Shown here: positions 2,990 through 55,300 of the stretch, one piece after another | Layout of the letters: every line of letters begins with the position of its first letter | How positions within the stretch are numbered: position 1 is the stretch's first letter | Assembly: GCA_965644265.1 (NCBI GenBank) | Contig: OZ286465.1 | Span: 89,652,001 to 89,716,000 of the forward strand | Direction: 5' to 3' | DNA length: 64,000 nt | DNA from: Glycera tridactyla | Taxonomy: Eukaryota | Made by a program: the position numbers and the translations under genes | Notes under the pieces: generated by a model | What the model saw: the letters and a program-made list of their open reading frames with translations, nothing else | What the model was told of the DNA's origin: nothing | Databases searched by the model: none

Positions 2990-3778
2990 GTAGTGTTCAT
3001 GGTGGTGATGGTGGCAGTGACGGCTGTGGTGACATTGACAATGGTGGTGGTGGTGGTGGTGGTGGTGATGCTGGTGCTGGTGATGGTGTCGGTGCCGGTG
3101 GTGCTGGTGCTGGTGCTGGTGCTGGTGGAGATGGTGGTGGTGGTGCTGGTGATCCTGGTGATGGTGCTGATGGTGATGGTGCTGATGGTGATGGTGCTGG
3201 TGGTGGTGATGGTGGTGATTGTGCCGGTGGTGTTGCTGATGCTTGTGGTGGTGCTGCTAGTGCTGGTGATTGTGNNNNNNNNNNNNNNNNNNNNNNNNNN
3301 NNNNNNNNNNNNNNNNNNNNNNNNNNNNNNNNNNNNNNNNNNNNNNNNNNNNNNNNNNNNNNNNNNNNNNNNNNNNNNNNNNNNNNNNNNNNNNNNNNNN
3401 NNNNNNNNNNTGCTGCCGGTGATGGTGCAGGTTGTGCTGCTGGTAATGCTGGTGCTGGTGGTGGTGGTGGTGGTGGTGGTGCTGCAGGTGTATGTGTCAG
3501 GTGTGAGTGTGTCAAGTGTGTGTCAGGTGTGTGTGTGTGTGTGTGTGTGTGTCAAGTGTGTGTGTGTGTGTCAGGTGTGTTTGTCAGGTATGTGTGTGTT
3601 GGGTGTGTGTCAGGTGTGTGTGTTAGGTGTGTCACACTTGGTGGTGTGACACACACACAAACCTGACACACACACACACCTGATATACACACCTGAAACA
3701 CACACCGAACACACATACCTGACACACACATTCACCTGATATACACACCTGAAACACACACCCAACACACACATGCCT

Positions 3779-4133: not shown

Positions 4134-4880
4134 GGAGATCCCTAATTCGAATTATCGAGATCCATGAATCGATTTATGGAGATCCCTAATTCAAATTATG
4201 GAGATCCCTAAATCGATTTAGGGTGATCCCTAATTCGAATTATGGAAAACCATAAATCGATTTATGGAGATCACTAAATCAAATTAGGGATCTCCCTAAA
4301 TGCCCTCATTTGAAGTAAGATGGCAGCACCATGGGCTGGCCTGATTTAGGGAACTCCATAAATCGATTTAGGGAGATCCCTAATTCGTTTTAGGGTGTTC
4401 GAATCATGGAAAAACATAAATCAATTCATGGAGATCACTAAATTTGGTGGACTTGCAACATGACTGAATTATGGAGTTCCATAATTCATTCATGGAACTC
4501 CCTAAATGATATATGGATATTGGCATATAGTCGTGATTTAGGGTATACCATAATTGATTTACGGTTCTCACTAAATGTCGTGGCAATCCTTGCAGTTTGA
4601 TACCGAAATCCATTATTCAATATGGGATCACCATAATTCAAGGGGGGAAATCACTAATTCGACCAGCTCATTTCTCATATCATGGTTTTCTCTAAATCGA
4701 TTTATGGTTCTCCATAATTCTGATTTAGTGAAAAACCATAATTCGAATTAGGGAGATCACTAAATACTCGAATAATTAGGGTTCTCCATAATTCGATTCA
4801 GGGAATACCCTAAATGATTCAGGGATCTCCCTCAATAAATAAGGTTCTCCATAAATCGAATTAGGGAGATCCCTAAATGG
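4134..4880. repeat. Inverted copy of the subterminal satellite (right arm)
   Basis: CATTTGAAGTAAGATGGCAGCACCATGGGCTGGCC at about 4307-4341 is the reverse complement of the left-arm module. Confidence 0.9.
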
Positions 4881-8026: not shown

Positions 8027-8544
8027 TATTTCATATATTCATTTCTCAATATGACTGAAAATTGTATTAAGTCGAAATAATATTCAGATTCGAGACGAGA
8101 ATCGAGTATAACCGAGAATAAGATATTTCAGGATTAATCATATTGGGGTGACAAGTACCACCCAACCCATTAGCCAATAAGCACAATAAGGGGAGGGATT
8201 AGTCCGGATATATAAGAGCGTGCAAGGCGGCGGCACAGCGAGGTTGCATCGGTGTGCCCCAGTCTTACCACACAAAAGGAGTGGGCTCAAAAGAGTCCTT
8301 CTCTGGCTTCCTCCATCATGCGAAGGGTGTTGCATGTGTTTCGATATAGACTTTCGTTGAACTCGTGATTTTGATAATTTCGTCATTTCATCGTGGGTCA
8401 GTTGCCATAGTCCGGAAGATTCCTACCTCTCACAATCCCCGTGGTCACAGGATATTCCGTTGAAGGTTATTACAGTGTGAGTTGTTTGTTTGAATGGATG
8501 ATGGTAGAAATTCAGTGGTCCGCTGAGGGCCACGATACCAAATA
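8027..8544 (+). repeat. 5' LTR
   Basis: Identical to 20497-21014 except at 8329, 8330, 8363 and 8491. Ends TATTT...AAATA. Confidence 0.95.
8174..8215 (+). promoter_or_regulatory. LTR U3 promoter: CCAAT (8174-8178) and TATATAA (8209-8215)
   Basis: Canonical motifs at a typical spacing, present in both LTRs. Confidence 0.65.
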
Positions 8545-8545
8545 T

Positions 8546-8563
8546 TGGTGGAGAAGCGTCGGG
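8546..8563 (+). promoter_or_regulatory. Primer-binding site, probably tRNA-Ala
   Basis: TGGTGGAGAAGCG lies 1 nt after the LTR. TGGTGGAGAA is complementary to the ...UUCUCCACCA 3' end of metazoan tRNA-Ala(AGC) as recalled from vertebrate sequence; the host tRNA was not checked. Confidence 0.7.
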
Positions 8564-8650
8564 TAAATTTCTACCTTGGACACATATATATATATATATA
8601 TAACAATAACAGTTTCATTTGTTGAGTGGAATACCTTGTTGGAAACCACG

Positions 8651-9577
8651 ATGAGTGACAGTGAGCACAGTGCGCGGGACGTGGTTTACGAAAACCCGGA
8701 ATATATGAGTCATGGTGCTTTGAGTGTGACAGACAACGTAGAATCACACGAAGACACTCTTCATGAGGCGGAGAGTGACAATTCGAACAGCGCGATGTCG
8801 GAGGCTGTTAGTTCGAACAGATGTGGAACTAATGATTGGTATACTGAAGACTCATATGATGAGATATTACTTCGTACAGAAAAGGTGTTAGCAGATTCGG
8901 CTGCAAAACCGGATACAGTACCAACGGCACGTGTGGACAGACTGAGAACATTGGATGGAGTGAATCGCGAGACCGCAAATTCGGAGAGAATAAGTACGCC
9001 GCTATCTCGTGGTCGGCATGACATCAGACCGATGACTTTGGATGATAAATTCTTGCCGCGAGTGGGCTTTCCTGGAAGAAAACATGAACTCGATGGTGAA
9101 TGTCATGAATATAGTGGCAGACATCATGGAGATCCATTTACGGATAATGAATTGCGCCCACCACGCTTGGATAGGGACTCATCATATTGCTTTGGAGATC
9201 CATTTCCAATTGTGACTTTGGACAATATACCGGAACATCCACATCCGGTACCTATACGGGATAGAGTTTACTCCCCACCACACAGGCACAGTGAGATGGA
9301 GGAAACAACGCCATCGTATTCGGAAGACGAGTTGGCAGCTTATTCATCGCTAGAATTGTCTACACCATCTACACCGGAAACCCCACCGCCACCATATGCA
9401 GAAACGGAACAGACACCGGAAACATCGTCAACAGAGTCTGAAGAAGGAACAGGTAACCAATCATTGTTTGAAACAGACTGGTCAAAATTTCTTATGAACG
9501 ATTGCCGACTCAGAAAGACTCTCGAAAACCGTTTGATAAAGTTGTCGGCTCTCACAGAAATCCAACCAGAACATTAA
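8651..9577 (+). CDS. ORF0 / Gag N-terminal part: acidic, disordered, with PPPPY motif
   Basis: ATG at 8651 in good context (ACCACGATGA), open to TAA at 9575-9577. Rich in D/E/S/T/P. PPPPY at 9383-9397. Overlaps the gag frame (-1) over 9472-9577. Confidence 0.7.
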   Translation: MSDSEHSARDVVYENPEYMSHGALSVTDNVESHEDTLHEAESDNSNSAMSEAVSSNRCGTNDWYTEDSYDEILLRTEKVLADSAAKPDTVPTARVDRLRTLDGVNRETANSERISTPLSRGRHDIRPMTLDDKFLPRVGFPGRKHELDGECHEYSGRHHGDPFTDNELRPPRLDRDSSYCFGDPFPIVTLDNIPEHPHPVPIRDRVYSPPHRHSEMEETTPSYSEDELAAYSSLELSTPSTPETPPPPYAETEQTPETSSTESEEGTGNQSLFETDWSKFLMNDCRLRKTLENRLIKLSALTEIQPEH

Positions 9578-11193
9578 AACCTCAGAAGCATGAAGTTTTC
9601 AGACCACTGCATGGTACAGGTGCAAAAGGAGTGAGTCAGAATTTGTATGAATGGATGAAACCGGAACATGAGTGGGATGATAGTGAGACTGGTTCATCAG
9701 ATATGTCAGATGAGGTGGATACTTCAGTTGTGATAGAGAAATGTGGAAGTATCTGGGATATGACATGCTGGAATATGAGAAAAATGAGTGAAGATATAAC
9801 TGAGGGAGTGCATATGATCCATGTGACAGGGGAGCCTACAATACCAATTCCAAATTTTATGCCTGACGATGCGGGGGCGGCTGCGAAGCATAGGGTAAAT
9901 GTTAAACTCCCAAAATTTAAACGGACGATGAACCCTACAGAGTGGATGACATTATATGAGCGATATGCTCAATTGTATGGGTTGTCAGATCGGGAGAAAC
10001 TAGATAATTTTGTATTTCACCTTTCTCCAGAGTTGTGGGGATGGTATTCAGGGGAAACAATCACTCAGGCGACTCGCTGGACCGATTTTCAGACAGCTTT
10101 CCTTGAAGAGTTTTGTGTGCCGAATTGTAACGAGTACTCATATTTGGCCAACTTGTATAATTTGAAGCAGGGAAGTCGGTCTTGTAAAGTATGGGGAGAC
10201 CAAGTCATAGCAGCGGTGCGATTATTACATCGCATGCGACAGGGAGATGATGTCGATGACACGGTGTTTCGGGAGATGAAATCGATTATTTTGGCCGGAG
10301 CAAATCCAACAACCAGACAGCAATTGCTTGTAAATGATCCGAAAACCTATACTGATTCAAAGAAAGCACTGATTTTGGTTTCGGGTTTGGAGAGCGGAGC
10401 CGAACAGAGCAACTCTCTCAGCATGGAGACCTTGAAACAGGAGATGCAAAAACTACTTCCTGACATTCTTACTCCAATAGTAAGACAATGTGGTCCTTCC
10501 GGGGGAATTAGTGAATCTATTTCTGGAATTCAGGGACAGGGAGGTAAACCCAAAACAAAGAAATCCACCAAGGTAAATGCAATACAACCTGAATCCACAG
10601 GGGGTCAATTTCAAGGTCAGTTACATGGGCAGGACGTTTCAGAAAATGATAGAGGGGTCCAGTGTTATGCATGTCATGGCTACGGCCACTATAGATCTGA
10701 ATGCCCTAACACAGTTGGTCAGGGAAACCGTCAGGGTAGACGAGGAAGTCGGGCAAATTCAGGTCGGGGTCGTGGAAATTTTAGAGGCAGATCGCGAAAC
10801 AATCAGCGGGATTTGCCTGTATGCCAAGTGTGTAACAGAATGGGACACACAGCGGGAACATGTTTTGTAGTAGCACAGACATATCTAAGAAGGCAGGGGC
10901 CTACAGGGGGAAGCCAATATCATGCGGCTATAGCAGAGGCTATGCAAAATTCAATGGATGAAAATTCGGGATTTTCCAGGGGAGCTCACCGAGGCGCACG
11001 AGGCAGGGGAGCAGAGGGTAGATCCTGGGTCGCGAACCCGGTTTTGTGGGTAACGATTCAATTTACAGACCCCAACCTAACTATGAGGAACATTACGAAG
11101 ACAACTGACTCCATTCCCAGGGGTTTCGGAATCGAGGGGCTGAAAAGGGCTGTGAGTTACAGAAACAGGGGTTCTCCCATGATGAATTTGTGA
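9502..11193 (+). CDS. gag: Gag (capsid plus nucleocapsid with two CCHC zinc knuckles)
   Basis: Capsid-like LPKFKRTMNPTEWMTLYE...ELWGWY. CYACHGYGHYRSEC (10663-10704) and CQVCNRMGHTAGTC (10822-10863) flank an RG-rich linker. Confidence 0.92.
   Translation: MPTQKDSRKPFDKVVGSHRNPTRTLKPQKHEVFRPLHGTGAKGVSQNLYEWMKPEHEWDDSETGSSDMSDEVDTSVVIEKCGSIWDMTCWNMRKMSEDITEGVHMIHVTGEPTIPIPNFMPDDAGAAAKHRVNVKLPKFKRTMNPTEWMTLYERYAQLYGLSDREKLDNFVFHLSPELWGWYSGETITQATRWTDFQTAFLEEFCVPNCNEYSYLANLYNLKQGSRSCKVWGDQVIAAVRLLHRMRQGDDVDDTVFREMKSIILAGANPTTRQQLLVNDPKTYTDSKKALILVSGLESGAEQSNSLSMETLKQEMQKLLPDILTPIVRQCGPSGGISESISGIQGQGGKPKTKKSTKVNAIQPESTGGQFQGQLHGQDVSENDRGVQCYACHGYGHYRSECPNTVGQGNRQGRRGSRANSGRGRGNFRGRSRNNQRDLPVCQVCNRMGHTAGTCFVVAQTYLRRQGPTGGSQYHAAIAEAMQNSMDENSGFSRGAHRGARGRGAEGRSWVANPVLWVTIQFTDPNLTMRNITKTTDSIPRGFGIEGLKRAVSYRNRGSPMMNL
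11121..11127 (+). promoter_or_regulatory. Candidate -1 gag-pol frameshift heptamer G GGT TTC
   Basis: X XXY YYZ pattern in the gag frame. The pol frame is open from 11109, and -1 slippage enters it. Confidence 0.6.
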
Positions 11194-13589
11194 AAGGTGA
11201 AAGTGGAAAGGTTAGAATGGAAGACGATATGTTTGTGTATGGAGTAAATGCCATGATATCGGTTGAGTCAGCTGACGGAGAAGTGACCGAAAATCTGGGT
11301 CAACTAAACACGATTCCTGTATATATATATGATGTTTTTCACCACGCCATGATTGATACGGGTGCTGGGGCAAATTGTCTCCGGAAAACTGTTTATGATT
11401 CTATTGATATGAAATGTGTTATGAATAAGAAGGATGTAAAAATTTTGAAGGATGCTCAAGGAAATGTCATTAAGGTGTTTGGATCGGTTAAAATTCCAGT
11501 GAAAATTGGGGGAATTGACCTTGAAATTCTTTTCTTTGTAGTGGAAACTATCCCATTTCCGGTCATACTGGGACTTCCTTTCTTGATAGAACAGGGGGCA
11601 GTTATTGACTATAAAGACAATCAGTTAAATTTGCCTACATCCTCAATCTCAGTAATTTTGGAACCCGTCGGAAATTTGCCTGTGACGTTGGAAGCAGCGG
11701 GTGATTGTGTGTTAAAACCGCATGCTATAGAACGAGTGAAGTGTGTGATTGCTGATTCGGGCGGGTTAAAACAGGAACTCAGCCCAGATCAAGTTTTGGA
11801 TGTGTCACAATTTTCAATTATGGGGAACCACGAAGATTTGATTTCATTGCCCGTTTTGTCAATACAACAACCAGATGGCACTTTCGAACTCATGGTGGCA
11901 AACACAGCTAATCATGAGGTTTCTCTTTCTGCACGAGAAATGACAGCCAAATGTAGAAAGAAGACAGTTCAGGTTGGGTTATGCCCTTTAAAACAGCCAG
12001 AATCCTTATGGATTGGACCCGAAGCACCCCGGGGAATTCAAGCAACAACTGAACAGGCAGACGTGAATTCTATCCAGGTCTTATGGCCTAAAATTCCGTT
12101 TGCTAATCCATTTGCAATAGCCGAGGAGAATGCCCATAGTAGGACTTTAGCTACTCAATCTGAAGTAGACATAAGAAATCAAACTCGTCAAGAGGTTTTT
12201 AAACCAATCAATTGGCATGATCTTGTTAAACTGGAACCCGAGGCTGAAATGTTCCGCACGAGACTGATTGAGATTGTAGAAGAACAGAGACCCGCATTTG
12301 CAATGGACCTTTCGGAATTGGCCGTTATTCATGACGTTGTACATCGCATTGAGTTAAAAGCAGACGCTACAGTAGTGAATCAAAGGGCTTATAAAATGCC
12401 ACCCGAACATGAAATGGAGCTAGAGAAACAAATAGGGAAACTAGTCGACGCTGGAATCCTAGTTCCCTCGCAATCTATGTGGGGCGTTCCTGCTTTTATA
12501 GTGTATCGGTACGATTCGCAGGGTAAACCCTTCCGTCCCAGATTGGTCGTGGATCTAAAACGATTAAATTCTATGATAGTTCCAGTGAATGCACCTATCC
12601 CTACCATAAATGATATAATCGACACGATCGCCGCGGGTAAGAATCGTGTGTTTTCCGTGGTTGATTTAGCATCGGCGTTTTATGCAGTACAGTTGTCTGA
12701 AGATAGTCAGGACATATGTTCCATTAACACCCGAAATGCTACATATACTTTCACAAAACTGGTGATGGGTTTGAATAATTCTCCCATTATATTTAATTAT
12801 TTAGTACAAAGATGCCTTTCTACACTAGATCCGAGGTATGTAGTCAGCTATATTGATGATATTCTCATCATGACTCCCACATATGAACAACACTTGGAAA
12901 TATTGCGGCAGGTGCTTTGGCGACTTCGTCAGGTAGGCCTCAGAATATCTCCATCCAAAGCAGAATTTTTAAAATCGTCTGTTAAATTCCTAGGCTATAC
13001 TTTCAATCGGCAGGGAGTACAGACAGACATGACTAAAATAGAAGCACTTGTTAAGATTCCCGCACCGCAAAATGTGAAGGAAGTGAGACAATTGATGGGG
13101 AGTTTTGGCTACTTCCGGCGATTTGTGAAAGACTTTGCCAAACTAGCTGCGCCGATTAACGAACTTTTGAAGAAAGACGAACCATTTGTTTGGACCGAGA
13201 AACGTCAACAAGCGTTGGATGATATTCGAAGGGGATTGCTCAAAAACGCCATTCTTTATTCCCCAGATCCGAACAAGCCATTTTATATTCACGTAGATGC
13301 AAGTGAACGCGCGATCGGCGCCGTGGTATCGCAGAAGGACATAAATGAGGTGACCAGACCTTGCGCTTTTATATCAAAGACACTGAATACCGCACAACAA
13401 AAGTATCATTCAAATGAAAAGGAAGTGTTAGCCTTAGTTGAAACATTAAAAAGCAGTGAAAATTACATAGGACCACAAACCCTAATCGAAGTTCAATCTG
13501 ATAATTTAACCACAGTGTATTTAGATAGTTTGACTGCTCGAACAGGGCGATTATATAGATACAAATGTATCTTAACCGATTTAATCTAA
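11190..13589 (+). CDS. pol: Pol part 1: aspartic protease, dUTPase-like spacer, reverse transcriptase, RNase H
   Basis: MIDTGAGAN (DTG 11355-11363), RLVVDLKRLN, VVDLASAF, MGLNNSP, YIDD (12849-12860), KFLGY, HVDASERAIGAV, EKEVLAL, SDN. Confidence 0.96.
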   Translation: MKGESGKVRMEDDMFVYGVNAMISVESADGEVTENLGQLNTIPVYIYDVFHHAMIDTGAGANCLRKTVYDSIDMKCVMNKKDVKILKDAQGNVIKVFGSVKIPVKIGGIDLEILFFVVETIPFPVILGLPFLIEQGAVIDYKDNQLNLPTSSISVILEPVGNLPVTLEAAGDCVLKPHAIERVKCVIADSGGLKQELSPDQVLDVSQFSIMGNHEDLISLPVLSIQQPDGTFELMVANTANHEVSLSAREMTAKCRKKTVQVGLCPLKQPESLWIGPEAPRGIQATTEQADVNSIQVLWPKIPFANPFAIAEENAHSRTLATQSEVDIRNQTRQEVFKPINWHDLVKLEPEAEMFRTRLIEIVEEQRPAFAMDLSELAVIHDVVHRIELKADATVVNQRAYKMPPEHEMELEKQIGKLVDAGILVPSQSMWGVPAFIVYRYDSQGKPFRPRLVVDLKRLNSMIVPVNAPIPTINDIIDTIAAGKNRVFSVVDLASAFYAVQLSEDSQDICSINTRNATYTFTKLVMGLNNSPIIFNYLVQRCLSTLDPRYVVSYIDDILIMTPTYEQHLEILRQVLWRLRQVGLRISPSKAEFLKSSVKFLGYTFNRQGVQTDMTKIEALVKIPAPQNVKEVRQLMGSFGYFRRFVKDFAKLAAPINELLKKDEPFVWTEKRQQALDDIRRGLLKNAILYSPDPNKPFYIHVDASERAIGAVVSQKDINEVTRPCAFISKTLNTAQQKYHSNEKEVLALVETLKSSENYIGPQTLIEVQSDNLTTVYLDSLTARTGRLYRYKCILTDLI

Positions 13590-15451
13590 AGTTGGCACAT
13601 AAACCAGGACGATTAAATCGAGTGGCAGATATGTTGTCGCGACTGTCTTATGATGGACAGCCAGAAACGTCCGAAGACGAAGAGCCCGATACATACGCAT
13701 TGATTAATGCGCCTGAATGGTTGAACGACAAATGTTCGACATCAGATTTCGATACGGTCGATGACTTAGCGCCGATTATTGAGTCAGATGACGAAAGTGA
13801 AGTTGAATCCCGCGAGAGACAATTTGATATGTTTGATGTATTTGAATCGCACGGAACCGACTGTGATAAACCACCTAGAAAAGACCCTGATTTGTCTCTT
13901 GAAAGCGATGAGGAAAACGTGGATTTAGAAGTAGGTAAAGAGCTTACAACAGAGCATGATCGGTTGGGATTTCTAACTCAAGATTCACAAAAGGTTTTGG
14001 ACACCTTAGACGAGTTGTTGGGTTTTGAAGATAGTTTTGACACTGAGCAACTCGGTGATATAAATGAACAAGAGTGTATCGATATTGCTCAAGAATTACT
14101 AAGAAACGCTCGTTTACTTGCTGCTGAACAGTCGGCAGATGCGGATTTTGGAGATATATATCAGTATAAGAAACATCGCGTTTTACCGGAAGCGGATACA
14201 TCGAGCCGTAGAGTATTGGCGGAAGAAGACAAGTTTTATTTGAATGAACTAGGCGTTCTTTATCGTAAATTTCACCCGCAACCAGGCGAGCGGTGTTATC
14301 ATCAGTTGATATTACCGATACGGCATCGAGCTCGAGTTACTCGATTGTTTCATCACGGATTACATGGTTCTCATAGAGGCTTTCATTCACTACTGTTTAT
14401 AGTGAGACAACGCTTCTTTTGGCGTAATATGTATGACGAGCTATTGCAGTATGTACTATTGTGTGAACAATGTTCAGCGGCAAAGCGAGACTATTCTCAT
14501 ATCAAGACGCCGCTACATATTCGACCTCCAGCTCGAATATTTGAAGTCCTGCATTTGGATGTGCTAAAAGTAGCTCCCACACCGTCAGGAGATCTCAAAT
14601 TGTTAGTAATTATAGATCGTTTCTCTAAGCATTTTGAGCTAGTTTGTGTTAAAAATGAGAAAGCCGACACCTTAGCATCAGCACTATTGAAAACCTGGAT
14701 CTATCGATTTGGTCCACCACGATTAATTGTGCTAGATAATGCGGCAGCTCATAGATCAGAGTTATTTCAGGCTATGGTGAGGCAGTTTGGAATTACACTT
14801 CGATTTATCACCAGCTGGCATCCGGCATCAAATGCGCAGGTTGAACGAGTACATTCGACAATCTTAACGGCCTTGCGAGCCTTAATGCTCGAATTTCCAA
14901 ACAGAACCTGGACTTCTTTTCTGGATCATATTAGATGGACTTGTGATATAACAACACACACTCATGGCTTCACTCCTTATGAGCTAATGTACGGTCTTGA
15001 GCCATATTTGACAGGGGATTTGAGTCATGAACCTCCTCTTATGCAAGATTTACCAGTACAACAGGCCTTAGGATATGTATGGCCAGATTTAATGGCCATG
15101 AGACAAGCCGCCGCAAGGAAAATGAGACTTGAGTCGGGGTATATGAAAGCCAGATATGATCAAAAACATAATGCTCGCTATAAAGGATATCAAGTTGGGG
15201 ATCGGGTATGGTTAAAGAAAATTAACCCAGACATACCGAATACTTATAAAATTGCTCCCAAATATATGGGACCATTCACTATTGTGGCTTCATCTCGACC
15301 GGGCTTTCATCAATTAAGACTTCTCAATCATACATTGAACAAATGTTTTCACGAAGAACGTTTGAAGCCCTATGTGCCTAAGTGCCAGGAGCAAATGCAA
15401 CATAGCGAATTTCGGAGGTCTCCGAAATTCCTGGCACTAATCAAAATGTAG
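13565..15451 (+). CDS. pol: Pol part 2: RNase H C-terminus, acidic spacer, integrase
   Basis: HKPGRLNRVADMLSRL; HHCC (HHGLHGSHRG...CEQC); D,D,E core (LHLDV, VLDNAAAH, NAQVERVH); GPY/F region (YQVGDRV...PKYMGPF). Joins part 1 if one base is restored at 13563-13565. Confidence 0.95.
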   Translation: MYLNRFNLKLAHKPGRLNRVADMLSRLSYDGQPETSEDEEPDTYALINAPEWLNDKCSTSDFDTVDDLAPIIESDDESEVESRERQFDMFDVFESHGTDCDKPPRKDPDLSLESDEENVDLEVGKELTTEHDRLGFLTQDSQKVLDTLDELLGFEDSFDTEQLGDINEQECIDIAQELLRNARLLAAEQSADADFGDIYQYKKHRVLPEADTSSRRVLAEEDKFYLNELGVLYRKFHPQPGERCYHQLILPIRHRARVTRLFHHGLHGSHRGFHSLLFIVRQRFFWRNMYDELLQYVLLCEQCSAAKRDYSHIKTPLHIRPPARIFEVLHLDVLKVAPTPSGDLKLLVIIDRFSKHFELVCVKNEKADTLASALLKTWIYRFGPPRLIVLDNAAAHRSELFQAMVRQFGITLRFITSWHPASNAQVERVHSTILTALRALMLEFPNRTWTSFLDHIRWTCDITTHTHGFTPYELMYGLEPYLTGDLSHEPPLMQDLPVQQALGYVWPDLMAMRQAAARKMRLESGYMKARYDQKHNARYKGYQVGDRVWLKKINPDIPNTYKIAPKYMGPFTIVASSRPGFHQLRLLNHTLNKCFHEERLKPYVPKCQEQMQHSEFRRSPKFLALIKM

Positions 15452-15453
15452 AT

Positions 15454-15996
15454 TTGACTGACACATTACGGGACACAGTAGAAAATAGAAATGTTTCAAT
15501 ACCGCCAAATGCTGGACTAAGGCAGGTTGGACAACGGCATGTTCCTTTATCGCCAGAAAGGGAAACTAATGTGAGGCCGGCGTTACGCCTTCGCGCCTTA
15601 CAAAAACAATCAGAATCAGATAGGTTGACCCAAAAGGATGATTTCGACAGAGATGGCACCCGTCCAAAACAGTCCTTCTCGGGTGGTACTAATAATAATA
15701 ATAATAATACTAACAAGAAACAACCAATTAGAATCCAAACTACATTTCCTCAAGCTAAGGAAATTACAATGAAACCTCCACGAATTGACACGATCAAGCA
15801 TGAGTTTCAGGAGTTGATTAAGATTTCTGCAAAACGTGTTGATTCCAACGGCTGTTATTTCTTATGTCATTGGAAGGGAAGAAAGCCCATCTGGATCAAA
15901 AAGGGAGAGATACCTTTAGATATATTAAAAGCCTTTGAAAGCGATGTGAGGGACAGACGTGTCACTCGCAGGGTTTTCTATTCGCCTGATAGTTGA
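15454..15996 (+). CDS. Integrase C-terminal extension ending in a chromodomain-like fold
   Basis: Frame open from 15406. ELIKISAKRVDSNGCYFLCHWKGRKPIWIKKGEIPLDILKAF (about 15811-15936) follows the chromo pattern xxI...R....yLvkWkG...tW....l...l..f. Confidence 0.65.
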   Translation: MTDTLRDTVENRNVSIPPNAGLRQVGQRHVPLSPERETNVRPALRLRALQKQSESDRLTQKDDFDRDGTRPKQSFSGGTNNNNNNTNKKQPIRIQTTFPQAKEITMKPPRIDTIKHEFQELIKISAKRVDSNGCYFLCHWKGRKPIWIKKGEIPLDILKAFESDVRDRRVTRRVFYSPDS

Positions 15997-16230
15997 ATGT
16001 GAGTGTGAATGACTCAATTCTGACGGGGAATAAGGTGTCTTAGAAAATAGTATATTCAGCCAGGTATTGAAGAAAGTGTCGCATGGTAACCGAAATATTG
16101 TCTGAAATGTTAAGAGTTAGGGCCCAACTCGAGGCATTTAAGGTACCTTGCTAGATGACTGCGGATGAGGATCCTCAGCTGGGGACAACTTGTTACAGTT
16201 GCCAGTAGTTTTAATTTTTGTATGTTGCAG

Positions 16231-18791
16231 TCAGGGTGACATCGAGAGTAACCCGACCTGGTATACGTGGAGGGACCACGTGGGTGTTTATTTGTACACT
16301 GCTCGTAACCTGCTTGATGGCAGAAGCGGTGATGGCCAGAGACGAGCTGAATTTAGATGGGATACCAGTAAATGTAGACCCAATCGAGAGATTGAATTTC
16401 AGGGCACTCTTCTTGCCATTGACGGGTGATTTCACACCAGCGACAGCCAATTACAAATTGCTGTTATTGTTGCCAGTGCCAAAATTTGACAAAGTTCAGG
16501 TGAAAATGTCAGATACGTTGATCAGATCCGAAAATAAATCACGTGGTTTTGTATGTGCAGGATTGCTCAATTTGGACCGGGGCACCCCTAGAGACGTGGA
16601 ATTGGGGGAGATATCCTGTAACTCTCTGATGTTAAGTTTGAGACAGATTCAGATGACCCAAGGAAATGTCACATCAGATCTTCTATCCGAAATGAATAAA
16701 CAGCTGCATCTGTTGAAAGGCAGCATTCCTGGTTTTGACTACAAAACACGCAAAGCACGTGAAACCTCTTCTTCTCAAGTACCTGATTGTGATCGTCGGG
16801 AAACGTTGGTTGATCGGTTGACTTGTTGGCATGGAGTCCTGTCGGCTGGCAATCTCGAGAACTTCCAATCTCGAAGCAAAAGACAAGTTCCGGAAAAAGA
16901 TAACACTTTGAATTTACAGTCTTGGCTGGACAAGATTCTTAGGGTGTCGAAACAAGCTAAAAGAGTGGAAAATTTGATAACGTATTCAAAATTACATCAA
17001 CTTATGGTGACCAGTCCCACCAGAAGAAAAAGAGCACTTTTCGGCTTTGTAGGCAAGATTTCAAGAGCATTATTTGGGACTGCAACCTCTGATGACATTC
17101 GGGAGTTAAAGCTAGCTATACATGATTTGAATTTTGGCTCTATGTCCACAGCAGCTCATTTGAAAGCTTTTCAACGATCGACCATAGCATTCTCGAAGGC
17201 CACTAATGATCAATTGCAACAGATACAACACACCATGCATGATATACAGAATACATTTGACCATTTGATTCAATATAACATGATGGAGATCTCGAAGGCA
17301 ATGTACGCCAACGTAGCTCTTTTGTCTATGATGATACAGGACATACAATTGGTAGGTCGAGAAATGGCCTCTTTTATGGATGGTTTGCGCGCATTGTTGA
17401 AGGGGGAGTTGTCACCTACCTTGATTGATGAGTATACATTGTATGATGCCTTGTCTGACCTTGCTGATGTGGTTGCACGAAATCATTCAACCTTTAGATT
17501 GGTTGAAACGGACCCTGTATATTATTATAAACGTGCTCGTGTCAAGTATGAGTGGATAAACGACACATTGGTGATATATTTGAATGTACCGTTGACGTCA
17601 ACTGTTACGCGTTTCAGACTGTATAAGATGACAACTTTCAGAGTGCCAGTGGCACAAAATGAATCCATTACTACTCGTCCAATTGTGGAACGAACTATAT
17701 TTGGTTTGTCACATGATCATACACGATTCCTTGAGATGTTGGAGTCTGACTTTGTGTCTTGTACACAGACACCTACAGTTCGATGTCAGCAGGCCATGGT
17801 AATACATGATGCATACCATCCAACATGTGCGATGAGTTTATTTTCAGGCGACAGGGGTGATATAGATAAATATTGCACATTTCGTCTGGAAATGGCGGTA
17901 CCATATTTGAACATTCAAACCTCGTCCCCAGGACGTTTAATAGTCTCCAATGCACAGTCGATCTCGGTCACATGCCCGGGGCGTTCTCCTGTGGTCAGGC
18001 AGGGTTGCATGTTTTGTGTAATTAATCAGCCCTGCAATTGCCAAGTTACTGGGTTAGATGAAGATTCAAGAACAGTAACAGTAACACCAATTTTAAAGGG
18101 TTGTATTTTGGATTCATGGAAATACGAAATGCAGTATCCTGTCAATATTCCTGTATTGTCCAGACTTCTGAATCCTGATCAGTTTGAAAAACTGGCTGTC
18201 AATAGATATGTCTCTAATTGGCAGAAAGTTCCGCAAGTATCGTTCAATATTGAACCTCTATCTCAGCAGCTCAGTTTGAGTGAAAGAGTTGACTTCGGAA
18301 TGGACCTAGATAGAGCAATCAAGCAGATGCAGGAAGATGAACGTTTGACGGTCATTCCACCTAGAGTGAAATTTCAAAATTCTCATTCATGGGTGATTCG
18401 TTTGTGTATCGGGATAACGGTTGTTGTTCTCGTAGTTGTTGTGGTTTTAGGAGTTATTTTGGCGATCTGGTGTAAGAAGACTAACTTTCGTCTGCTGCGC
18501 AAAATTTGTGATTGCAGACGTATTTTCAGTAAAAGAACAACAGCCACCGCACAAACAACGGCAGGAATCGAATTGTTGAATCTGGCAACCACCGCAATGG
18601 AAGAAATGCGGCCTGTCCGAAAGAGACCGAGTTCACCTATATTGGGCACACATTCTGATAATTATGAACCGATAATAACTACTGAACCTGTGAGCGTGTC
18701 AAGCAGATCTGTATTGCCACCTCCTACACCAAAGCCTAGTATCCGAACCAATCCAAAGGTAATGCGTATTGGTCAGGATAAACCTTCCTAA
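16231..18791 (+). CDS. env: Env, class I F-type fusion glycoprotein (main exon)
   Basis: Signal-peptide hydrophobic core WVFICTLLVTCL; furin site RRKR followed by fusion peptide ALFGFVGKISRALFGTATSDD; heptad repeats; Cys-rich region; N-glycosylation sequons NVT, NHS, NDT, NES; TM at about 18390-18473; ~105 aa tail. Confidence 0.92.
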
Positions 18792-20485
18792 GAAGGCTAC
18801 ATTATGTTCATGATATTACATTGACGTGCTCCAACCTTGTCCCACCTAGATACCTTTTCCGCTGTTTTGTATGCCACCCTTATGTTTTGGGACTAGCGAT
18901 AACGCAAAGTGGTCCTTACGAAGGGACGATTTAGCAATACAATGGCGATGTAACGGTTTATTTATTTTTCGTTTTCATAGTGGTTCTCCGCTGCTGGAGA
19001 TCGATTCTTGCAATTAGCGACCACAAACTTTACGCCTGCAAGAGTCGACTCTGATGGCCAGAAAATCAAATAGAGGGACTTGTGGAAGGTACGTTGACGC
19101 GTTGCAAGAGTCAGGTGTGGTAGACCTGACTGCCACACATGAATCAGGCAGCTCTTGCCAATCTTCCATATTGATCCCGCCCAGTTGTTTAGGTTGGGGA
19201 AGTATATTATTAAAGGTTTTGGACGCACGTAAACTGGATTGCTAATACATTTGTCAACTTTTTATGTTTTGTATATATATATTTAGTCGTTGTGTTTCGT
19301 GTTGTGCTGCATTATTCTGAGTGTCGGGCATGACGCGGAAGGTGAGAAGGAGTGAGGGCATTTTATTTGTTAAAATGTCATGGAATGTGAACTGAAAGTA
19401 TGGTGTGAGAGGAAACTTGTCCCTTTCGTGTCCTGTCTGTGCTCTCGAATATCTTATAACGCAGAAAAGGGAAAACATTGTTGGTTTAATTTGTTTCTTG
19501 GGTTTCTTCATTTATGGACACGACATTTTCGTGTGCGTAATAAGCAGCACATGTCATCACCACCGATAAATATGTCTTCGCGTGACCGCGCCTATGTAAT
19601 TGTTTAACCGATATGTAGTTGACATTGACAACATGTCTGTAAACCTAGACGTATCAACACCTTTTTCTAAGGCTACATGGCGCCAAACTCCTTGATTGAT
19701 GACATGGAAATGTTATTTCATGTCGCACAATGTTATCGGGAGGAAATCATGAGACATTCTTGGTCGAACACCATGTCATGATAGGGGGATTTTGGTGATA
19801 ATTGTAAAAATTCTTTGTTTTCTCTTGAAAGTTCATATTACGGGTAGTTTATTTGATTCGTATTGGGTTGTATAATCACTTGTGTTATTCAAAGTGGTTA
19901 AGCATTACGTAGCTAATCATGTGCAGCATGCCTTAGAACGATGAGGGGTGATGGACAAGATGACTGGACAAGTCCATCGTTCCTATATGGCGATAAGCAT
20001 TGTTTGGTTCATACTGAACTTTTCGGAATAAGAACGTATAAAGAAGTTCTTGCATATGTGCTATGATGCGTTGCTTGCTTGCTGGTATTGATCCTTCAAT
20101 GGAATACTGACTAATCATTTTTATGTCTTGCTTTTCAGACAGTTTGTAATAATAAAATTGCGGAAATCGTTCCTGTTGACCGTACCCTCCCTTCTCCTGT
20201 GATTCCGACTCTGTTTGATGCCGCTCCGTCCAGGTTGGCCCAAGGGTGGTCCAATCGGGAATGTGGGGGAGACATGGAGTGGAGCCGGATCACGAGCCGG
20301 ATCAGTAGACTGTCGGTACTGTGGGGCAGCACATGATGAAATACACCAAAAAAAAAAAAAAAAAAAAAAAAAATTTTTTTCATACATTTTATTTTATTTT
20401 ATTTAGTATTACTATTTTTAATTTTATTGTATCTTAATTGAAAAATCAAAATGCATTGATTGTTTTTGGAGGACCAAAAAATCTC

Positions 20486-20496
20486 GGGAAGGGGCG
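20486..20496 (+). promoter_or_regulatory. Polypurine tract
   Basis: GGGAAGGGGCG immediately before the 3' LTR. Confidence 0.8.
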
Positions 20497-21014
20497 TATT
20501 TCATATATTCATTTCTCAATATGACTGAAAATTGTATTAAGTCGAAATAATATTCAGATTCGAGACGAGAATCGAGTATAACCGAGAATAAGATATTTCA
20601 GGATTAATCATATTGGGGTGACAAGTACCACCCAACCCATTAGCCAATAAGCACAATAAGGGGAGGGATTAGTCCGGATATATAAGAGCGTGCAAGGCGG
20701 CGGCACAGCGAGGTTGCATCGGTGTGCCCCAGTCTTACCACACAAAAGGAGTGGGCTCAAAAGAGTCCTTCTCTGGCTTCCTCCATCATGCGAAGGGTAC
20801 TGCATGTGTTTCGATATAGACTTTCGTTGAACACGTGATTTTGATAATTTCGTCATTTCATCGTGGGTCAGTTGCCATAGTCCGGAAGATTCCTACCTCT
20901 CACAATCCCCGTGGTCACAGGATATTCCGTTGAAGGTTATTACAGTGTGAGTTGTTTGTTCGAATGGATGATGGTAGAAATTCAGTGGTCCGCTGAGGGC
21001 CACGATACCAAATA
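20497..21014 (+). repeat. 3' LTR
   Basis: 514 of 518 positions identical to the 5' LTR by manual comparison. Confidence 0.95.
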
Positions 21015-21310: not shown

Positions 21311-24300
21311 GTATGGATAATACTCATCACGCCTGATGGATTTCTACCTGTGTCTCACCCATCTCATCTTCTCATTTCACTCAGCAAGCCTTCTATCAGA
21401 CGGCTCCTCCGCACCGATTAGTGTCCGCTGAAATGAGCAGGCTCTAGGGATGCAGCGAGGTGTCAGGATTCCTTGGGTGTGTGATGTGATGACGCGAAGG
21501 ATCGCATGTTGATGCTTGACTGGAGTCGGACAACGTTAGCTGGCTACAGATTATGGATATATTCACAGCAACTAATCATGGTGAGTTACAATTAAGTCAA
21601 ATTATCGCAGGAATTTACAGTAGATTTGCTGTCCGGGATGATTCTGATGATTATGAAGATATTGATGGTGATGGTTATTGTTATCTTTTGAATCATCAAT
21701 ATTATTANNNNNNNNNNNNNNNNNNNNNNNNNNNNNNNNNNNNNNNNNNNNNNNNNNNNNNNNNNNNNNNNNNNNNNNNNNNNNNNNNNNNNNNNNNNNN
21801 NNNNNNNNNNNNNNNNNNNNNNNNNNNNNNNNNNNNNNNNNNNNNNNNNNNNNNNNNNNNNNNNNNNNNNNNNNNNNNNNNNNNNNNNNNNNNNNNNNNN
21901 NNNNNNNNNNNNNNNNNNNNNNNNNNNNNNNNNNNNNNNNNNNNNNNNNNNNNNNNNNNNNNNNNNNNNNNNNNNNNNNNNNNNNNNNNNNNNNNNNNNN
22001 NNNNATTATCACCTCCGTCATTTTCCATCAACACCACAAACACCACCGACATCAAATGATCAAGCTTATGCCGGTGCTCTTCCTGGACCCATTGTGTGCC
22101 CAAAAGTTGGATTAAATTTTTGACATCAAGCCATGCAACCTTCGACATCATCCGGTGGTGAACTCTAGCTCCCTTACCTCTGGTTATGCAACACGAGGAT
22201 GAGGTATCAAAGGAGCCTGTCGAACATCTATCACGCCTCAGAAGAGGATGTATTGCAGTTACATCGATGCCAGTTATACTGACTATGCACGGCTTGGCTG
22301 CGGAGTACCTTTTTGTAATTAGAATGAGAACGGATCGGTGTTCAGGGAAATCATCATCCGAGCAAGAATCCAGGCATGTTTCCTATTGTTCCAAAAGCTT
22401 TTGTGTAAACATTGTTGCGGTTAAATCGTCCACTCGACCTCATTGAAGGATGGTGGTAAGAGAAAGGGGGGGGGGAGAAAGGCATAGATAAAAACGAAAA
22501 AGAACGAAATGAGGATAGAAGGATATGATGAATAGGAGATTAGAATCAAACAAGGTGAAAGAAAGGTGAAAGAAAGGAAGGACATAAGGATGGAAGAAAA
22601 ATAGAGAAAGGTACGTAGGCTGAAAGAGAGAAAGAACATGACGAGAAAGAAATGAATGAGAAAGGAGTGACAGGAGGGAATGTATGAAGAATTGGATAGA
22701 TGCATGGAAGAAAGAGTGTGAAAGAGTGTATATGTAGGACATGTCATCGAGTTTGTGGAATGGACCTACTCAGCCGGGAATATAATGAGAGATAGCACTC
22801 TTCTCTGTATGCCATGCCAAAACATCATATTATGAAAGTGGTCGGACATCTGCGGGTGTAATTGACAGATCCATCTTGTCAATATTGATCGATATCATAG
22901 CATTCACCTGATATGAACCTGGATAACCTGCAGGATGAAATGAGCCAAGCCGGAATGCTGCACCTGTCAGGGATGAGCCGTTCAGCTGGATAAAATATAC
23001 ATTCTTTCATTGCGCACTCAATATCTGATAAAGCGAGCTGCGCACTGTATTCAGACAAATTCTACAAACACATGTTTAAATTTAGCGCATAGAATCCAAC
23101 TTGACTCAACTCAACTCAACGCAACAAAGGTCATCTAAAAAAATGGATCATCTTATCAAGATCAGGAGTCTATGTGGAGAAAGTGGAGAAATTGTCAGGT
23201 GCATCAGGACATACATGCGTGCTTTCCTAAGATAGGCCTGTGGTAAGGTGAGGTAAGTAAAATCTCCATCACGCAGAAGACAATTGTTCTATTCAGGTCA
23301 TATTACATGCTAATGCATATAGAGAATCAAAATAAAAGCAGTTGTTCAAACGAATTGAATAAAACAAATCAATTGAATTAGTTGTAAACATGCAATAATT
23401 TGGTTAGCATTTGGTTACATACTGATACTGATACACAATCAGATGTGCTATATTGACAGGGTTCAGGTCGATGTGGCTACTTATGCCATATATGGAAAGA
23501 GTGAAGATGGCAAAGTAAGTCCGGAGAGGCTGATATATAATCAGGCGAAGCAATACCAGTGCATATGTGTTCATACATCAGACAGACACGGTAGTGTGGA
23601 CATACATGAGAGCATACTTACATGTATGGTTATGTCACAGAGACCGTACGTCTCCTGCATGACGACATGCATAAAATACAATGAATATATGCATGATTAT
23701 ACTAACTTCATTTCTATCGTTCCAGGCACCAACCATGTTTTCATTATCAGTGATTGATGATATGATCGATGACCTCAGTAGATTCAGCAGATATAATAAA
23801 AATACAGCCAAAGAAACGAAGAATAAGAACATTATTAACGTATGATGATTGCAGAACAGTCAGTAATAAGAGTCGGCATCTGATACATCCATCAGAGATG
23901 TGTCTGCTAATGAGCACGGAGGAGTCGGCATTATTACCTGGAATTCGTCATGTTTTGGTGCAATATACATCTCAACAAGGGTTTGGGGCACTTTCATCAT
24001 CGGAGGTGATGGATATTCGGTGACGATATGAATAATATGCCAGAAGCTGCGATGAATCAGCGTGGTGTGCTCTAGATCCCAGATATCTGCCTTCCTTGTA
24101 AACTGATATGGCTGCTTGGACAAAGTGGCATTGACTCAAAGGGAGAAAATATGTTTTTTCAACCTCCCCCGAGAGTGTAAATAAAGTTTCAAATCACGTC
24201 TATACGCTAATAGATCGATGCTTGCATTGGAACATACATTATTCTGTCTGCCGTCAGATAGATGGACAGATTGATAGATGGATTAGTGGATAGGTGGGTG

Positions 24301-25237: not shown

Positions 25238-26960
25238 ATGGGCCGCAAAAGTGAGAAAAGGGACCGCCGTCCCAAAAAATCAGCAGTATTCATAGACAGC
25301 TCGGACGAAGAGAGGGTCAATGAAGATTTGAAGAATTTATCATCAGAGAAACAGGTAACTAAAACAAATAACTAGAATAAACCAACATCAGATCAAAGAC
25401 GAGCGACACCGCCACGACCACCAGCCATGCCTAGTCAGGACCCACAGTTCATACACACACAACCCACATACCACCAAAATACATACACACAACAACACTA
25501 TTGATCAGACCGCTATCACCAACCGACACCTGATCCCACCACCTAAAAAACACATCCAACACCAACATGCAAGCAGAAGAAACCACTTTACAAGCATAAT
25601 TCCACTACACCCACCACATACGATGGACCACCAGCCAGACTTACATACACCAACATTTGCAAACAAATCCTGTACGACCAAGTACTACACCTGTATACCT
25701 ATCCCTCACCTCTTCTAATTCCAGGAGAGATCCATCCGAGTAGACACCCCCTTCGAACAAAGAGATGTACTCAAACGTAAATACGTACCATCACGGGAGA
25801 CTCAAAAGAAGCAACGTATCCGTAGTACCACCTCCAGCAGCTCCAGTTCGAGCAGTTCCGTATCCAGCTCAAGCAGTAGCAGTAGTTGCAACACAAGCTC
25901 GAGCAGTGACTCCGAAAATGAAGAAACTAAGAGAGCCACGAAACCCAAAGCCCAAAGAAAGACGAGGAGAGTACCATCACCCACTCGTCACGATTTGGCG
26001 AAAAAACGCGACGCCACACCGGCAGAAACCACGTCACGGTTAGATCACGAACTAGAGAAACCACCAAATAAACTACAGATGGCGACACTCAACCAAAACT
26101 GAACCACCGGATTCAAGAAACCAAATACAATCAAAAAACGCAGAGACTTTAAATGTACAGTGTGCAATCACACTTTTGCCAGCCTCCAGAACCTGGTTAG
26201 ACACAGGTCAGCAAACCACCCCCATGCATTAACGGACGGGCACCAGTGTCAAATATGCAGCCGCCTTTTCACTACTAGAACTGCCTTAAATGATCATATC
26301 AAATCACGGCACCCCTGGGTAAATGAATCAGACCCGAATTGGGCAGACCATATTGCTACATACAACCCCCGACGACACGCAGACACCCCACAGAACAAAA
26401 GATGTGCGGAGGTAACACCCACAACCCCCAACGAACCCACTAGAAAGATCCACAAACCCACATCGACCAATGACTTCGATTTCACCCCAAAGAAGTTGCT
26501 AAACCCAAAGAAGGGAGCTTTCCCAACACCAGAGGTGAAAACAAGCAACGATTCGACCTACCCAGTCAATTTGATCCCCATCACTAACAACGAACCACAG
26601 AAGGACCCTAGACTTAGCGTGATGAAATTAGTAAGCGATCACAGTCTCAGTATTAATCTACTGACCAAGAGCATTAACACCCTACTGACTAGCGTAAGAT
26701 CCATTGAATACAGATTGAATACCTTATGCCAGGACAGAGCCCCTGTCGACATCAGTACTCAGACCCAGACTCAGCAGACATTTGACTCAGATACACAGAC
26801 AAAGCCAGAAACCCAGATCCAGCACCCAGACGATTTAACAAACTCTCTTTGCGAACAAGCGTCGAAAATTAGCCTGGAACAGCCACAAGTCCCCACAGAT
26901 CTCTCTATAGAAATGAAACGAATTCATATCAATGAGGACGATTGCGAAAGTCGCTTATAG
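25238..26960 (+). pseudogene. Two-exon gene (25238-25354, 25725-26960) for a ~450 aa basic/Ser-rich protein with two C2H2 zinc fingers and a coiled coil; one in-frame TGA at 26100
   Basis: ATG, 39 codons, CAG|GTAACT donor. TTCTAATTCCAG acceptor, phase 0 to 0, frame open apart from 26100-26102. Fingers FKCTVCNHTFASLQNLVRHRSANH and HQCQICSRLFTTRTALNDHIKSRH. AATAAA at 27599. Confidence 0.75.
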
Positions 26961-55283: not shown

Positions 55284-55300
55284 TGTATCGAATGAGAGTA

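What the first reader, a model, noticed from the sequence alone, without database searches (positions are those of the whole stretch)
8027..21014. Young enveloped Ty3/Gypsy element combining retrovirus-like budding/entry signals with a chromodomain-like integrase tail
Seen: LTRs 99.2% identical, a PPPY motif upstream of capsid, an F-type env with signal peptide, fusion peptide and TM, and a chromo-like ORF after integrase. Known: env-bearing errantiviruses and chromodomain-bearing chromoviruses are classically separate Gypsy groups. Inference: a possibly still infectious invertebrate endogenous retrovirus lineage carrying both modules.
Basis: partly seen in the sequence, partly recalled or inferred. 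Interest (0 to 1): 0.85.

Follow-up and report, generated by a model that had tools for sequence, protein, structure and literature searches.

The report
Env-bearing Ty3/gypsy element with chromodomain
This is a recently inserted 13-kb retrovirus-like element of an unidentified animal genome that has an envelope gene and a chromodomain-like tail after its integrase; this combination has already been described in invertebrates, and this copy has interrupted reading frames.

Summary
Window 8027-21014 (+) is a full-length LTR retroelement:
- Two 518-bp LTRs differ at 4 positions (99.2% identical).
- The gag gene has a PPPPY motif ahead of a capsid-like part with two CCHC knuckles.
- The pol gene runs PR-RT-RNase H-IN and matches yeast Ty3 best.
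- The env gene is F-type, with a signal-like segment, an RRKR site, a fusion peptide and a membrane anchor.
- After integrase lies a module whose predicted fold matches chromo and chromoshadow domains.

- The env-plus-chromodomain combination is not new. Chary & Hayashi (PMC13524379; preprint 2023) describe env-carrying Ty3/gypsy elements across metazoans, including a clade in Cnidaria, Mollusca and Annelida that carries chromodomains.
- This copy is not intact as assembled. gag has one frameshift and pol has two, one of them ahead of the chromo-like module. env is open but has no ATG before its signal segment, so it probably needs a spliced mRNA.

The chromo-like module has no detectable sequence relatives. 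I could not determine the host, the copy number or the clade.

Verdict: a new member of a known kind, of modest interest.

The parts
8027..8544 (+). 5' LTR (518 bp). It has a CCAAT box at 8174 and a TATA box at 8209, a 5-bp terminal inverted repeat, and no canonical TG..CA ends.
8546..8563 (+). Primer-binding-site-like stretch starting with TGG, 1-2 nt after the LTR. The tRNA was not identified.
   Evidence: no tRNA gene in the window
8651..11193 (+). gag, given as one part because one frameshift interrupts it in this copy. It has a disordered acidic/Ser/Pro-rich N-terminal part with PPPPY (9383-9397), an all-helical capsid-like part, and two CCHC knuckles (10663-10704, 10822-10863).
11121..11127 (+). 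X_XXY_YYZ-type heptamer in the gag frame, 64 nt before the gag stop, with the pol frame open across it. It is a candidate programmed -1 gag-pol frameshift site.
   Evidence: the downstream fold is no better than shuffles
11121..15996 (+). pol, given as one part because two frameshifts interrupt it in this copy. Domains: PR 11313-11609 (DTG), RT 12531-13004 (YIDD), RNase H 13191-13577 (DAS), an acidic linker, IN zinc finger 14315-14488, IN core 14540-14824, IN SH3/GPY-F module 15197-15376 (GPF at 15269), a basic low-complexity linker, and the chromo-like module.
15784..15951 (+). Chromo-like module: helix, three strands, then a C-terminal helix.
16209..16230 (+). Pyrimidine-rich tract ending in CAG, just upstream of the env signal segment. 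It is a candidate splice acceptor for a subgenomic env mRNA.
   Evidence: the first in-frame ATG lies inside the signal segment
16218..18791 (+). env, an F-type class I fusion glycoprotein with an open frame of 857 codons and no interruption. Signal-like segment 16272-16340, RRKR 17022-17033, fusion peptide 17034-17090, Baculo_F match 16929-18479, membrane anchor 18399-18473, cytoplasmic tail of about 100 aa.
18792..20485 (+). 1.7-kb non-coding 3' region with an A26 run at 20348-20373 and an AT-rich end. Its origin is unexplained.
20486..20496 (+). Polypurine tract directly upstream of the 3' LTR.
20497..21014 (+). 3' LTR.

Best explanation
This is a full-length, recently integrated LTR retroelement of the Ty3/gypsy (Metaviridae) type, with the order gag-pol-env plus a chromodomain-like tail after integrase. 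It is a non-insect 'ancient errantivirus' of the kind described by Chary & Hayashi. Shown here: the LTR pair, PBS and PPT; the PR-RT-RNase H-IN order with catalytic motifs present; an F-type env with its cleavage site, fusion peptide and anchor; and the chromo fold. Inferred mechanism: transcription starts from the U3 CCAAT/TATA promoter. Gag carries a PPxY-type late-domain motif that could recruit NEDD4-family ligases and ESCRT for budding. Pol is made by a -1 ribosomal frameshift at the heptamer. Env is translated from a spliced subgenomic RNA, cleaved by a furin-like protease at RRKR, and acts as a class I fusogen. The chromo-like tail tethers integrase to chromatin and so biases target choice. 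The copy in this window is defective as assembled: one frameshift in gag, two in pol, none in env.
For: LTRs 99.23% identical. Pfam: RVT_1 2.5e-29, RT_RNaseH_2 5.3e-28, rve 1e-11, Integrase_H2C2 3.7e-10, Baculo_F 1.9e-13. The best solved-structure matches for both RT and IN are yeast Ty3 (4ol8 1.6e-49; 7q5b 7.8e-49 and 7.2e-25). Chromo fold. The env cleavage site and fusion peptide are conserved in a relative that is 21% identical overall. The published precedent has the same architecture, including a furin site and fusion peptide in F-type env and chromodomains at the C-terminus of pol (PMC13524379). Six open stretches follow each other with overlaps, each -1 relative to the last.
Against: I could make no RT/IN phylogeny, so placement in the published chromodomain-bearing clade, or in any clade, is untested. 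The chromo-like module has no sequence relatives, fails Pfam thresholds, and is not in the integrase frame. The capsid assignment is weak: Retrotrans_gag E 0.13, and the AF2 model has pLDDT 39. No clear target-site duplication exists unless the LTR ends are moved inward by 2-4 nt. No downstream RNA structure supports the frameshift site. The host is unknown and no other copies were available.
Confidence: 0.8

Rival explanations
1. The frame interruptions are assembly or sequencing errors, and the genomic copy is in fact intact, or belongs to a family with intact, recently active copies.
For: All interruptions are -1 shifts with overlapping open stretches and no internal stops. The catalytic motifs are all present. 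The LTRs are 99.2% identical. env is fully open. The published survey finds multi-copy intact elements in most phyla.
Against: Only one of the five junctions lies near a homopolymer of 5 or more, so the typical long-read error signature is mostly absent. With 0.8% LTR divergence, a few real indels in 12 kb are expected.
Confidence: 0.25
2. The chromo-like stretch is a separate small accessory ORF or a chance open frame. It is not a C-terminal extension of integrase and not a functional chromodomain.
For: It lies in a different frame from integrase. No homologue was found among 5.8 billion clusters of similar length or among 1.84 billion representatives. Pfam Chromo (PF00385) does not match; only Chromo_PTM does, below its cut-off.
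Against: A single-sequence AF2 model reaches pLDDT about 90 for a three-strand-plus-helix fold, which is unusual for random sequence. The Foldseek matches are almost all chromo or chromoshadow domains. The position after the GPY/F module is where chromoviral chromodomains sit. The open stretches of integrase and this ORF overlap by 46 nt, as expected for one gene with a 1-nt shift.
Confidence: 0.12
3. The element is a recent chimera: a chromovirus-like gag-pol that picked up env and the long 3' region from another element, rather than a member of an old env-bearing lineage.
For: The element is unusually long at 13 kb. It has a 1.7-kb non-coding tail with an internal A26 run. The integrase has a GPY/F module, unlike Drosophila errantiviruses. 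The published work itself infers several origins and occasional env exchange.
Against: No target-site duplication flanks the A-run. The published trees show env mostly co-diverging with pol. There is no composition break at the pol-env border.
Confidence: 0.15

Closest known systems
Chromodomain-carrying 'ancient errantiviruses' of Cnidaria, Mollusca and Annelida (Chary & Hayashi, eLife 2026, PMC13524379; bioRxiv 2023)
   Same: The gag-pol-env order, an F-type env with a furin site and hydrophobic fusion peptide, a chromodomain C-terminal to integrase, and young copies flanked by LTRs.
   Different: Clade membership and host phylum are untested. Here the chromo-like module is out of frame with integrase and has no detectable sequence relatives. 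This copy does not meet their 'intact' criterion.
Drosophila errantiviruses (gypsy, ZAM, Idefix; genus Errantivirus)
   Same: A Ty3/gypsy pol plus a baculovirus-F-like env. A possible palindromic A/T target (TATA) like that of the gypsy subgroup (PMC5408687). LTR ends that are not TG..CA.
   Different: Drosophila errantivirus integrases lack the GPY/F motif (PMC5408687), whereas this one has GPF plus an SH3_Tf2-1 match and a chromo-like tail. No second RNase H-like domain is detectable between RNase H and IN, only an acidic linker. The element is about 13 kb rather than about 7.5 kb (the latter figure is from my own knowledge).
Chromoviruses (the chromodomain-bearing Ty3/gypsy branch, e.g. Maggy, Sushi and plant CRM/Reina/Galadriel, named in PMC13524379)
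   Same: A GPY/F module followed by a chromo-fold domain at the integrase C-terminus. The best solved-structure relative is Ty3.
   Different: This element carries an env gene. Its chromo-like module does not match Pfam Chromo and lies about 130 residues downstream of the GPY/F module in another frame.
Baculovirus F and paramyxovirus/pneumovirus F class I fusion proteins
   Same: A Pfam Baculo_F match over most of the profile, and a polybasic cleavage site directly followed by a hydrophobic fusion peptide, with a C-terminal anchor.
   Different: There is no match to any solved F structure by sequence. The gene is encoded by a retroelement, not by a DNA or RNA virus.
PPxY late domains of retroviral Gag (known from alpha-, beta-, gamma- and deltaretroviruses; from my own knowledge)
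   Same: A PPPPY motif in a disordered Gag segment upstream of capsid.
   Different: The evidence is at motif level only. I found no literature on late domains in errantivirus Gag in the searched library.

Membership tests
Ty3/gypsy (Metaviridae) LTR retroelements | Domain order PR-RT-RNase H-IN between two LTRs, with a PBS and a PPT | tested here: met
   Pfam domain order; LTRs, PBS and PPT
Ty3/gypsy (Metaviridae) LTR retroelements | RT and IN closer to Ty3/gypsy than to other reverse-transcribing groups | tested here: inconclusive
   The best PDB hits are Ty3 for both RT and IN, but gammaretroviral and caulimoviral RTs score only a little lower. No tree was made.
Env-carrying 'ancient errantiviruses' with chromodomain (PMC13524379) | gag-pol-env with an F-type or gB-type env that has a signal peptide, ectodomain and membrane anchor | tested here: met
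Env-carrying 'ancient errantiviruses' with chromodomain (PMC13524379) | Chromodomain at the C-terminus of pol | tested here: inconclusive
   The fold and position are met. However, the module is in another frame than IN in this copy, and no sequence-level chromodomain match passes threshold.
Env-carrying 'ancient errantiviruses' with chromodomain (PMC13524379) | Placement in that clade in the RT/connection and IN trees; host in Cnidaria, Mollusca or Annelida | not testable with these tools
   The supplementary sequences are not held. The host was not identified.
Env-carrying 'ancient errantiviruses' with chromodomain (PMC13524379) | Bridge region with RNase H plus a 'mini' domain rather than a duplicated 'pseudo' RNase H | tested here: inconclusive
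   Pfam finds no second RNase H-like domain in the 250 residues before the IN zinc finger. Residues 31-180 of that stretch are 32% Asp+Glu. No structure model of the bridge was made.
Insect errantiviruses (genus Errantivirus sensu stricto) | Integrase without a GPY/F motif (PMC5408687) | tested here: not met
   GPF at 15269, within an SH3_Tf2-1 match of E 1.1e-5 that is below the gathering score
Insect errantiviruses (genus Errantivirus sensu stricto) | PBS for tRNA-Ser, tRNA-Lys or tRNA-Leu | not tested
Chromoviruses | Chromodomain recognisable by sequence (Pfam Chromo) fused in frame to IN after the GPY/F module | tested here: not met
   There is no PF00385 match even at E<=10, and the frame differs from IN. 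The fold is nevertheless chromo-like.
Chromoviruses | No env gene (classical description) | tested here: not met
   An F-type env is present
Troyka LTR retrotransposons (PMC12440569) | CG..CG termini and 3-bp target-site duplications | tested here: not met
   The LTR ends are A/T-rich, with a TATTT..AAATA inverted repeat

The most novel reading that the evidence does not exclude
The chromo-like module is a lineage-specific chromodomain with no sequence relatives, acquired independently of classical chromoviruses. It is expressed from its own -1 frame downstream of integrase, either as a separate accessory protein or through a second programmed frameshift. Together with a PPxY late-domain motif and an F-type fusogen, it would mark a still-circulating env-bearing lineage with an expression strategy not yet described for Metaviridae.
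Probability: 0.1. Interest if true: 0.55.

Novelty: new member of a known kind. Interest (0 to 1): 0.3.

Why it matters
It adds one more divergent example to the recently recognised, metazoan-wide group of envelope-carrying Ty3/gypsy elements, some of which carry chromodomains. Its env is 21% identical and its integrase stretch 37% identical to the nearest database proteins. Two details are worth recording. One is the PPPPY motif in Gag, for which I found no literature in errantiviruses. The other is the near-identical cleavage-site and fusion-peptide block shared with a very distant env. Neither changes the current picture, and the copy seen here is interrupted in gag and pol.

Tried and rejected
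- Sequence relatives of the chromo-like ORF: none among proteins of similar length and none among 1.84 billion representatives.
- Exact look-ups of the env, integrase-frame and gag N-terminal products, to find the source genome or other copies: nothing on record.
- Cluster look-up of the nearest hits: no names or accessions.
- Capsid structure model: pLDDT 38.7, too poor to search with, so the third fold search was not used.
- RNA fold downstream of the gag-pol heptamer: no better than shuffles, z = +1.1.
- tRNA and Rfam scans of the window: empty, so the primer tRNA is not identified.
- Other copies, solo LTRs or protein-level fragments of the element in the rest of the window: none.
- Nested retroposed insertion ending in the A26 run: no flanking duplication found.
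- Host genes: only a C2H2 zinc-finger open frame and low-complexity hits, with no taxon signal.
- Troyka superfamily: rejected on the LTR termini.
- Target-site duplication: none with the maximal LTR bounds. TATA or ATATA is possible if the LTR ends are moved in by 2-4 nt, so this stays ambiguous.
Full report
**1. Observation**

A direct repeat pair bounds the region. An alignment of the two ends shows identity from 8027 to 8544/8545 on the left and from 20497 to 21014/21015 on the right. Taken as 518 bp, the two LTRs differ at 4 positions, which is 99.23% identity; two of the four differences are adjacent. The LTR has a CCAAT box at 8174 and a TATA box at 8209. It does not have the usual TG..CA ends; instead it has a 5-bp terminal inverted repeat.

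Directly after the 5' LTR lies an 18-nt stretch starting with TGG (8546-8563), in the position of a tRNA primer-binding site. Directly before the 3' LTR lies a purine run (20486-20496), in the position of the polypurine tract.

With the maximal LTR bounds there is no target-site duplication. If the ends are set 2-4 nt inward, a TATA or ATATA duplication appears on both sides. That would resemble the palindromic TATA target reported for the Drosophila gypsy subgroup (PMC5408687). It cannot be told apart from the LTR ends in this A/T-rich context.

**2. Coding content**

Six long open stretches follow each other on the + strand, each shifted by -1 relative to the one before. The first five overlap their successors by 31-106 nt.

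- **gag, N-terminal part.** From the ATG at 8651 this part is acidic, Ser/Pro-rich and without family matches. It holds PPPPY at 9383-9397. In shuffles of this segment PPPY arises in 0.65% of trials and PPxY in 7%.
- **gag, second part.** This part has a weak Retrotrans_gag match (E 0.13), is predicted all-helical in a low-confidence model (pLDDT 38.7), and ends with two CCHC knuckles. The capsid assignment therefore rests on position and on the knuckles.
- **pol.** Pfam finds an aspartyl protease, RVT_1 (2.5e-29), RT_RNaseH_2 (5.3e-28), Integrase_H2C2 (3.7e-10), rve (1e-11) and, below threshold, the Tf2-type SH3 domain. The DTG, YIDD, DAS, HHCC and GPF motifs can be read directly. Among solved structures the best matches for both the RT-RNase H and the integrase parts are yeast Ty3.
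- **Bridge between RNase H and integrase.** About 250 residues separate RNase H from the integrase zinc finger. Residues 31-180 of this stretch are 32% Asp+Glu, and there is no second RNase H-like match.

**3. The chromo-like module**

The stretch after integrase translates to 180 residues. The first 110 or so are basic and low in complexity. The last 60 or so (15784-15951) fold, in a single-sequence AlphaFold2 model, into a helix, three strands and a C-terminal helix at pLDDT about 90.

Foldseek against the PDB returns almost only chromo and chromoshadow domains among the top 50: cpSRP43, CBX2/6/7/8, HP1, CDY/CDYL, Rhino and SUV39H1. Probabilities are 0.97-1.0, the TM-score normalised to the target is 0.6-0.67, and rmsd is about 2 A over about 50 residues. 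E-values are modest (0.016 and above), as expected for so short a domain.

In the viral library the matches with high probability and low rmsd are a mavirus rve-family integrase and a 'Chromo domain-containing protein' of an algal virus.

At sequence level the support is below threshold: Chromo_PTM at E 0.005-0.02, cpSRP43 chromodomains at E 0.13, and no Pfam Chromo match. No homologue was found in two very large protein searches.

**4. env**

The open frame of 857 codons matches Baculo_F (E 1.9e-13, profile positions 102-587 of 609). Its features are:

- a hydrophobic signal-like segment at aa 19-41;
- RRKR at aa 269-272, directly followed by a hydrophobic Gly/Phe-rich peptide;
- five N-glycosylation sequons and a Cys-rich C-terminal ectodomain;
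- a strong membrane anchor at about aa 728-752;
- a tail of about 100 residues.

The only database relative is 21% identical overall. It nevertheless shares an almost identical block of about 25 residues covering the cleavage site and fusion peptide, as well as several cysteines. This is good evidence of constraint on a fusogen.

The frame has no ATG upstream of the signal segment; the first ATG lies inside it. A pyrimidine tract ending in CAG sits at 16209-16230. I therefore infer that env is translated from a spliced subgenomic RNA whose first exon supplies the start codon, as is known for Drosophila gypsy (from my own knowledge). No tool predicted this intron. The joined model was therefore not built or searched, and the env exon was searched by reference on its own.

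**5. State of this copy**

One of the four frame changes between gag and the end of pol is the gag-pol boundary. There, a heptamer of the X_XXY_YYZ type lies in the gag frame at 11121-11127, with the pol frame open across it. This fits a programmed -1 frameshift, although the downstream RNA folds no better than shuffles.

The other three frame changes have no such explanation, and I count them as interruptions:

| Gene | Frameshifts | Note |
|---|---|---|
| gag | 1 | |
| pol | 2 | one lies ahead of the chromo-like module |
| env | 0 | |

There are no premature stops other than those that follow from the shifts. Insertions and deletions could not be assessed because no other copy was available. 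Only one of the five junctions lies near a homopolymer run, so a systematic long-read error is not the obvious cause, but it cannot be excluded without reads. As assembled, this copy cannot make a continuous Gag or Gag-Pol.

**6. Surroundings and copies**

The rest of the window holds no other copy, solo LTR or protein-level fragment of the element. Exact look-ups of three of its products found nothing. The nearest integrase-frame hit is 37% identical and unnamed. The host could not be identified. The flanks are rich in minisatellites, and the window has six masked N runs, none inside the element.

The 1.7-kb non-coding tail between env and the 3' LTR contains an A26 run (20348-20373) without flanking duplications. 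It is unexplained.

**7. Comparison with what is known**

Chary & Hayashi (eLife 2026, PMC13524379; preprint 2023) searched invertebrate genomes for intact gag-pol-env Ty3/gypsy elements. Their findings relevant here are:

- Such elements occur in most metazoan phyla, with F-type or gB-type env.
- The F-type env proteins have a conserved furin site and a hydrophobic fusion peptide.
- Non-insect 'ancient errantiviruses' differ from insect ones in the RNase H bridge region.
[quoted passage not shown] C-terminal to Integrase', with further scattered chromodomain carriers.

The present element agrees with that description in order, env type, env landmarks, and the position and fold of the chromodomain.

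It differs from Drosophila errantiviruses in having a GPY/F module (PMC5408687 states that errantivirus integrases lack it). It differs from classical chromoviruses in having env.

Whether it sits in the published clade could not be tested.

**8. Verdict**

The element is a young, divergent, interrupted copy of a known kind: an env-bearing Ty3/gypsy element with a chromodomain-like integrase tail. I score interest at 0.3.

**9. Slips and omissions to declare**

- My first notebook entry lists the mechanical ORF bounds from the ORF listing, which bracket the frame changes. While reasoning, I also considered where one pol frame change falls relative to a domain. I stopped doing this and give only counts here.
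- While reasoning, I read a few codons across the hypothetical env splice to check phase. No joined sequence was written, saved or searched.

Noticed in passing
window 56402-58644: A 51-bp minisatellite of about 44 copies, 95% matching. It creates long spurious open frames on both strands that give meaningless Pfam hits.
   Followed up: partly
window 42262-43199; 51759-52386; 54110-55285: Three more minisatellites: 39 bp x 24, 61 bp x 10 and 60 bp x 20, at 92-97% matching. The window is unusually rich in tandem arrays of 40-60-bp units.
   Followed up: no
window 794-2470 and 4134-4400: Arrays built from a 22-bp palindromic unit, organised in higher-order repeats of 172 and 282 bp, with an inverted copy at 4134-4400. 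Between them lie TGG-rich and CA-rich microsatellites and two masked N runs. This may be the ends of a large inverted-repeat element.
   Followed up: no
window 25359-26957 (+): An A-rich region (AT skew up to +0.3) has one reading frame open over about 1.6 kb except for two in-frame stops. It has C2H2 zinc fingers at the 3' end (zf-C2H2_6, E 2.5e-10) and an SR-25-like low-complexity stretch. It could be a pseudogene or a large exon of a host zinc-finger gene.
   Followed up: partly
window 20348-20373: An A26 run followed by a T/A-rich stretch lies inside the element's 3' non-coding region, 124 nt before the 3' LTR. No flanking duplication was found and its origin is unexplained.
   Followed up: partly
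window 8584-8602: An (AT)n microsatellite lies in the leader between the primer-binding site and the gag start.
   Followed up: no
window 2734-2919, 3275-3410, 21708-22004, 38970-39124, 46999-47136, 63086-63251: Six N runs totalling 1078 bases, all outside the element. They were left as they are.
   Followed up: no
window 17022-17090 versus protein P0012: The env cleavage-site and fusion-peptide block is nearly identical to that of an unnamed metagenome protein that is 21% identical overall. This is an island of extreme conservation in F-type env.
   Followed up: partly
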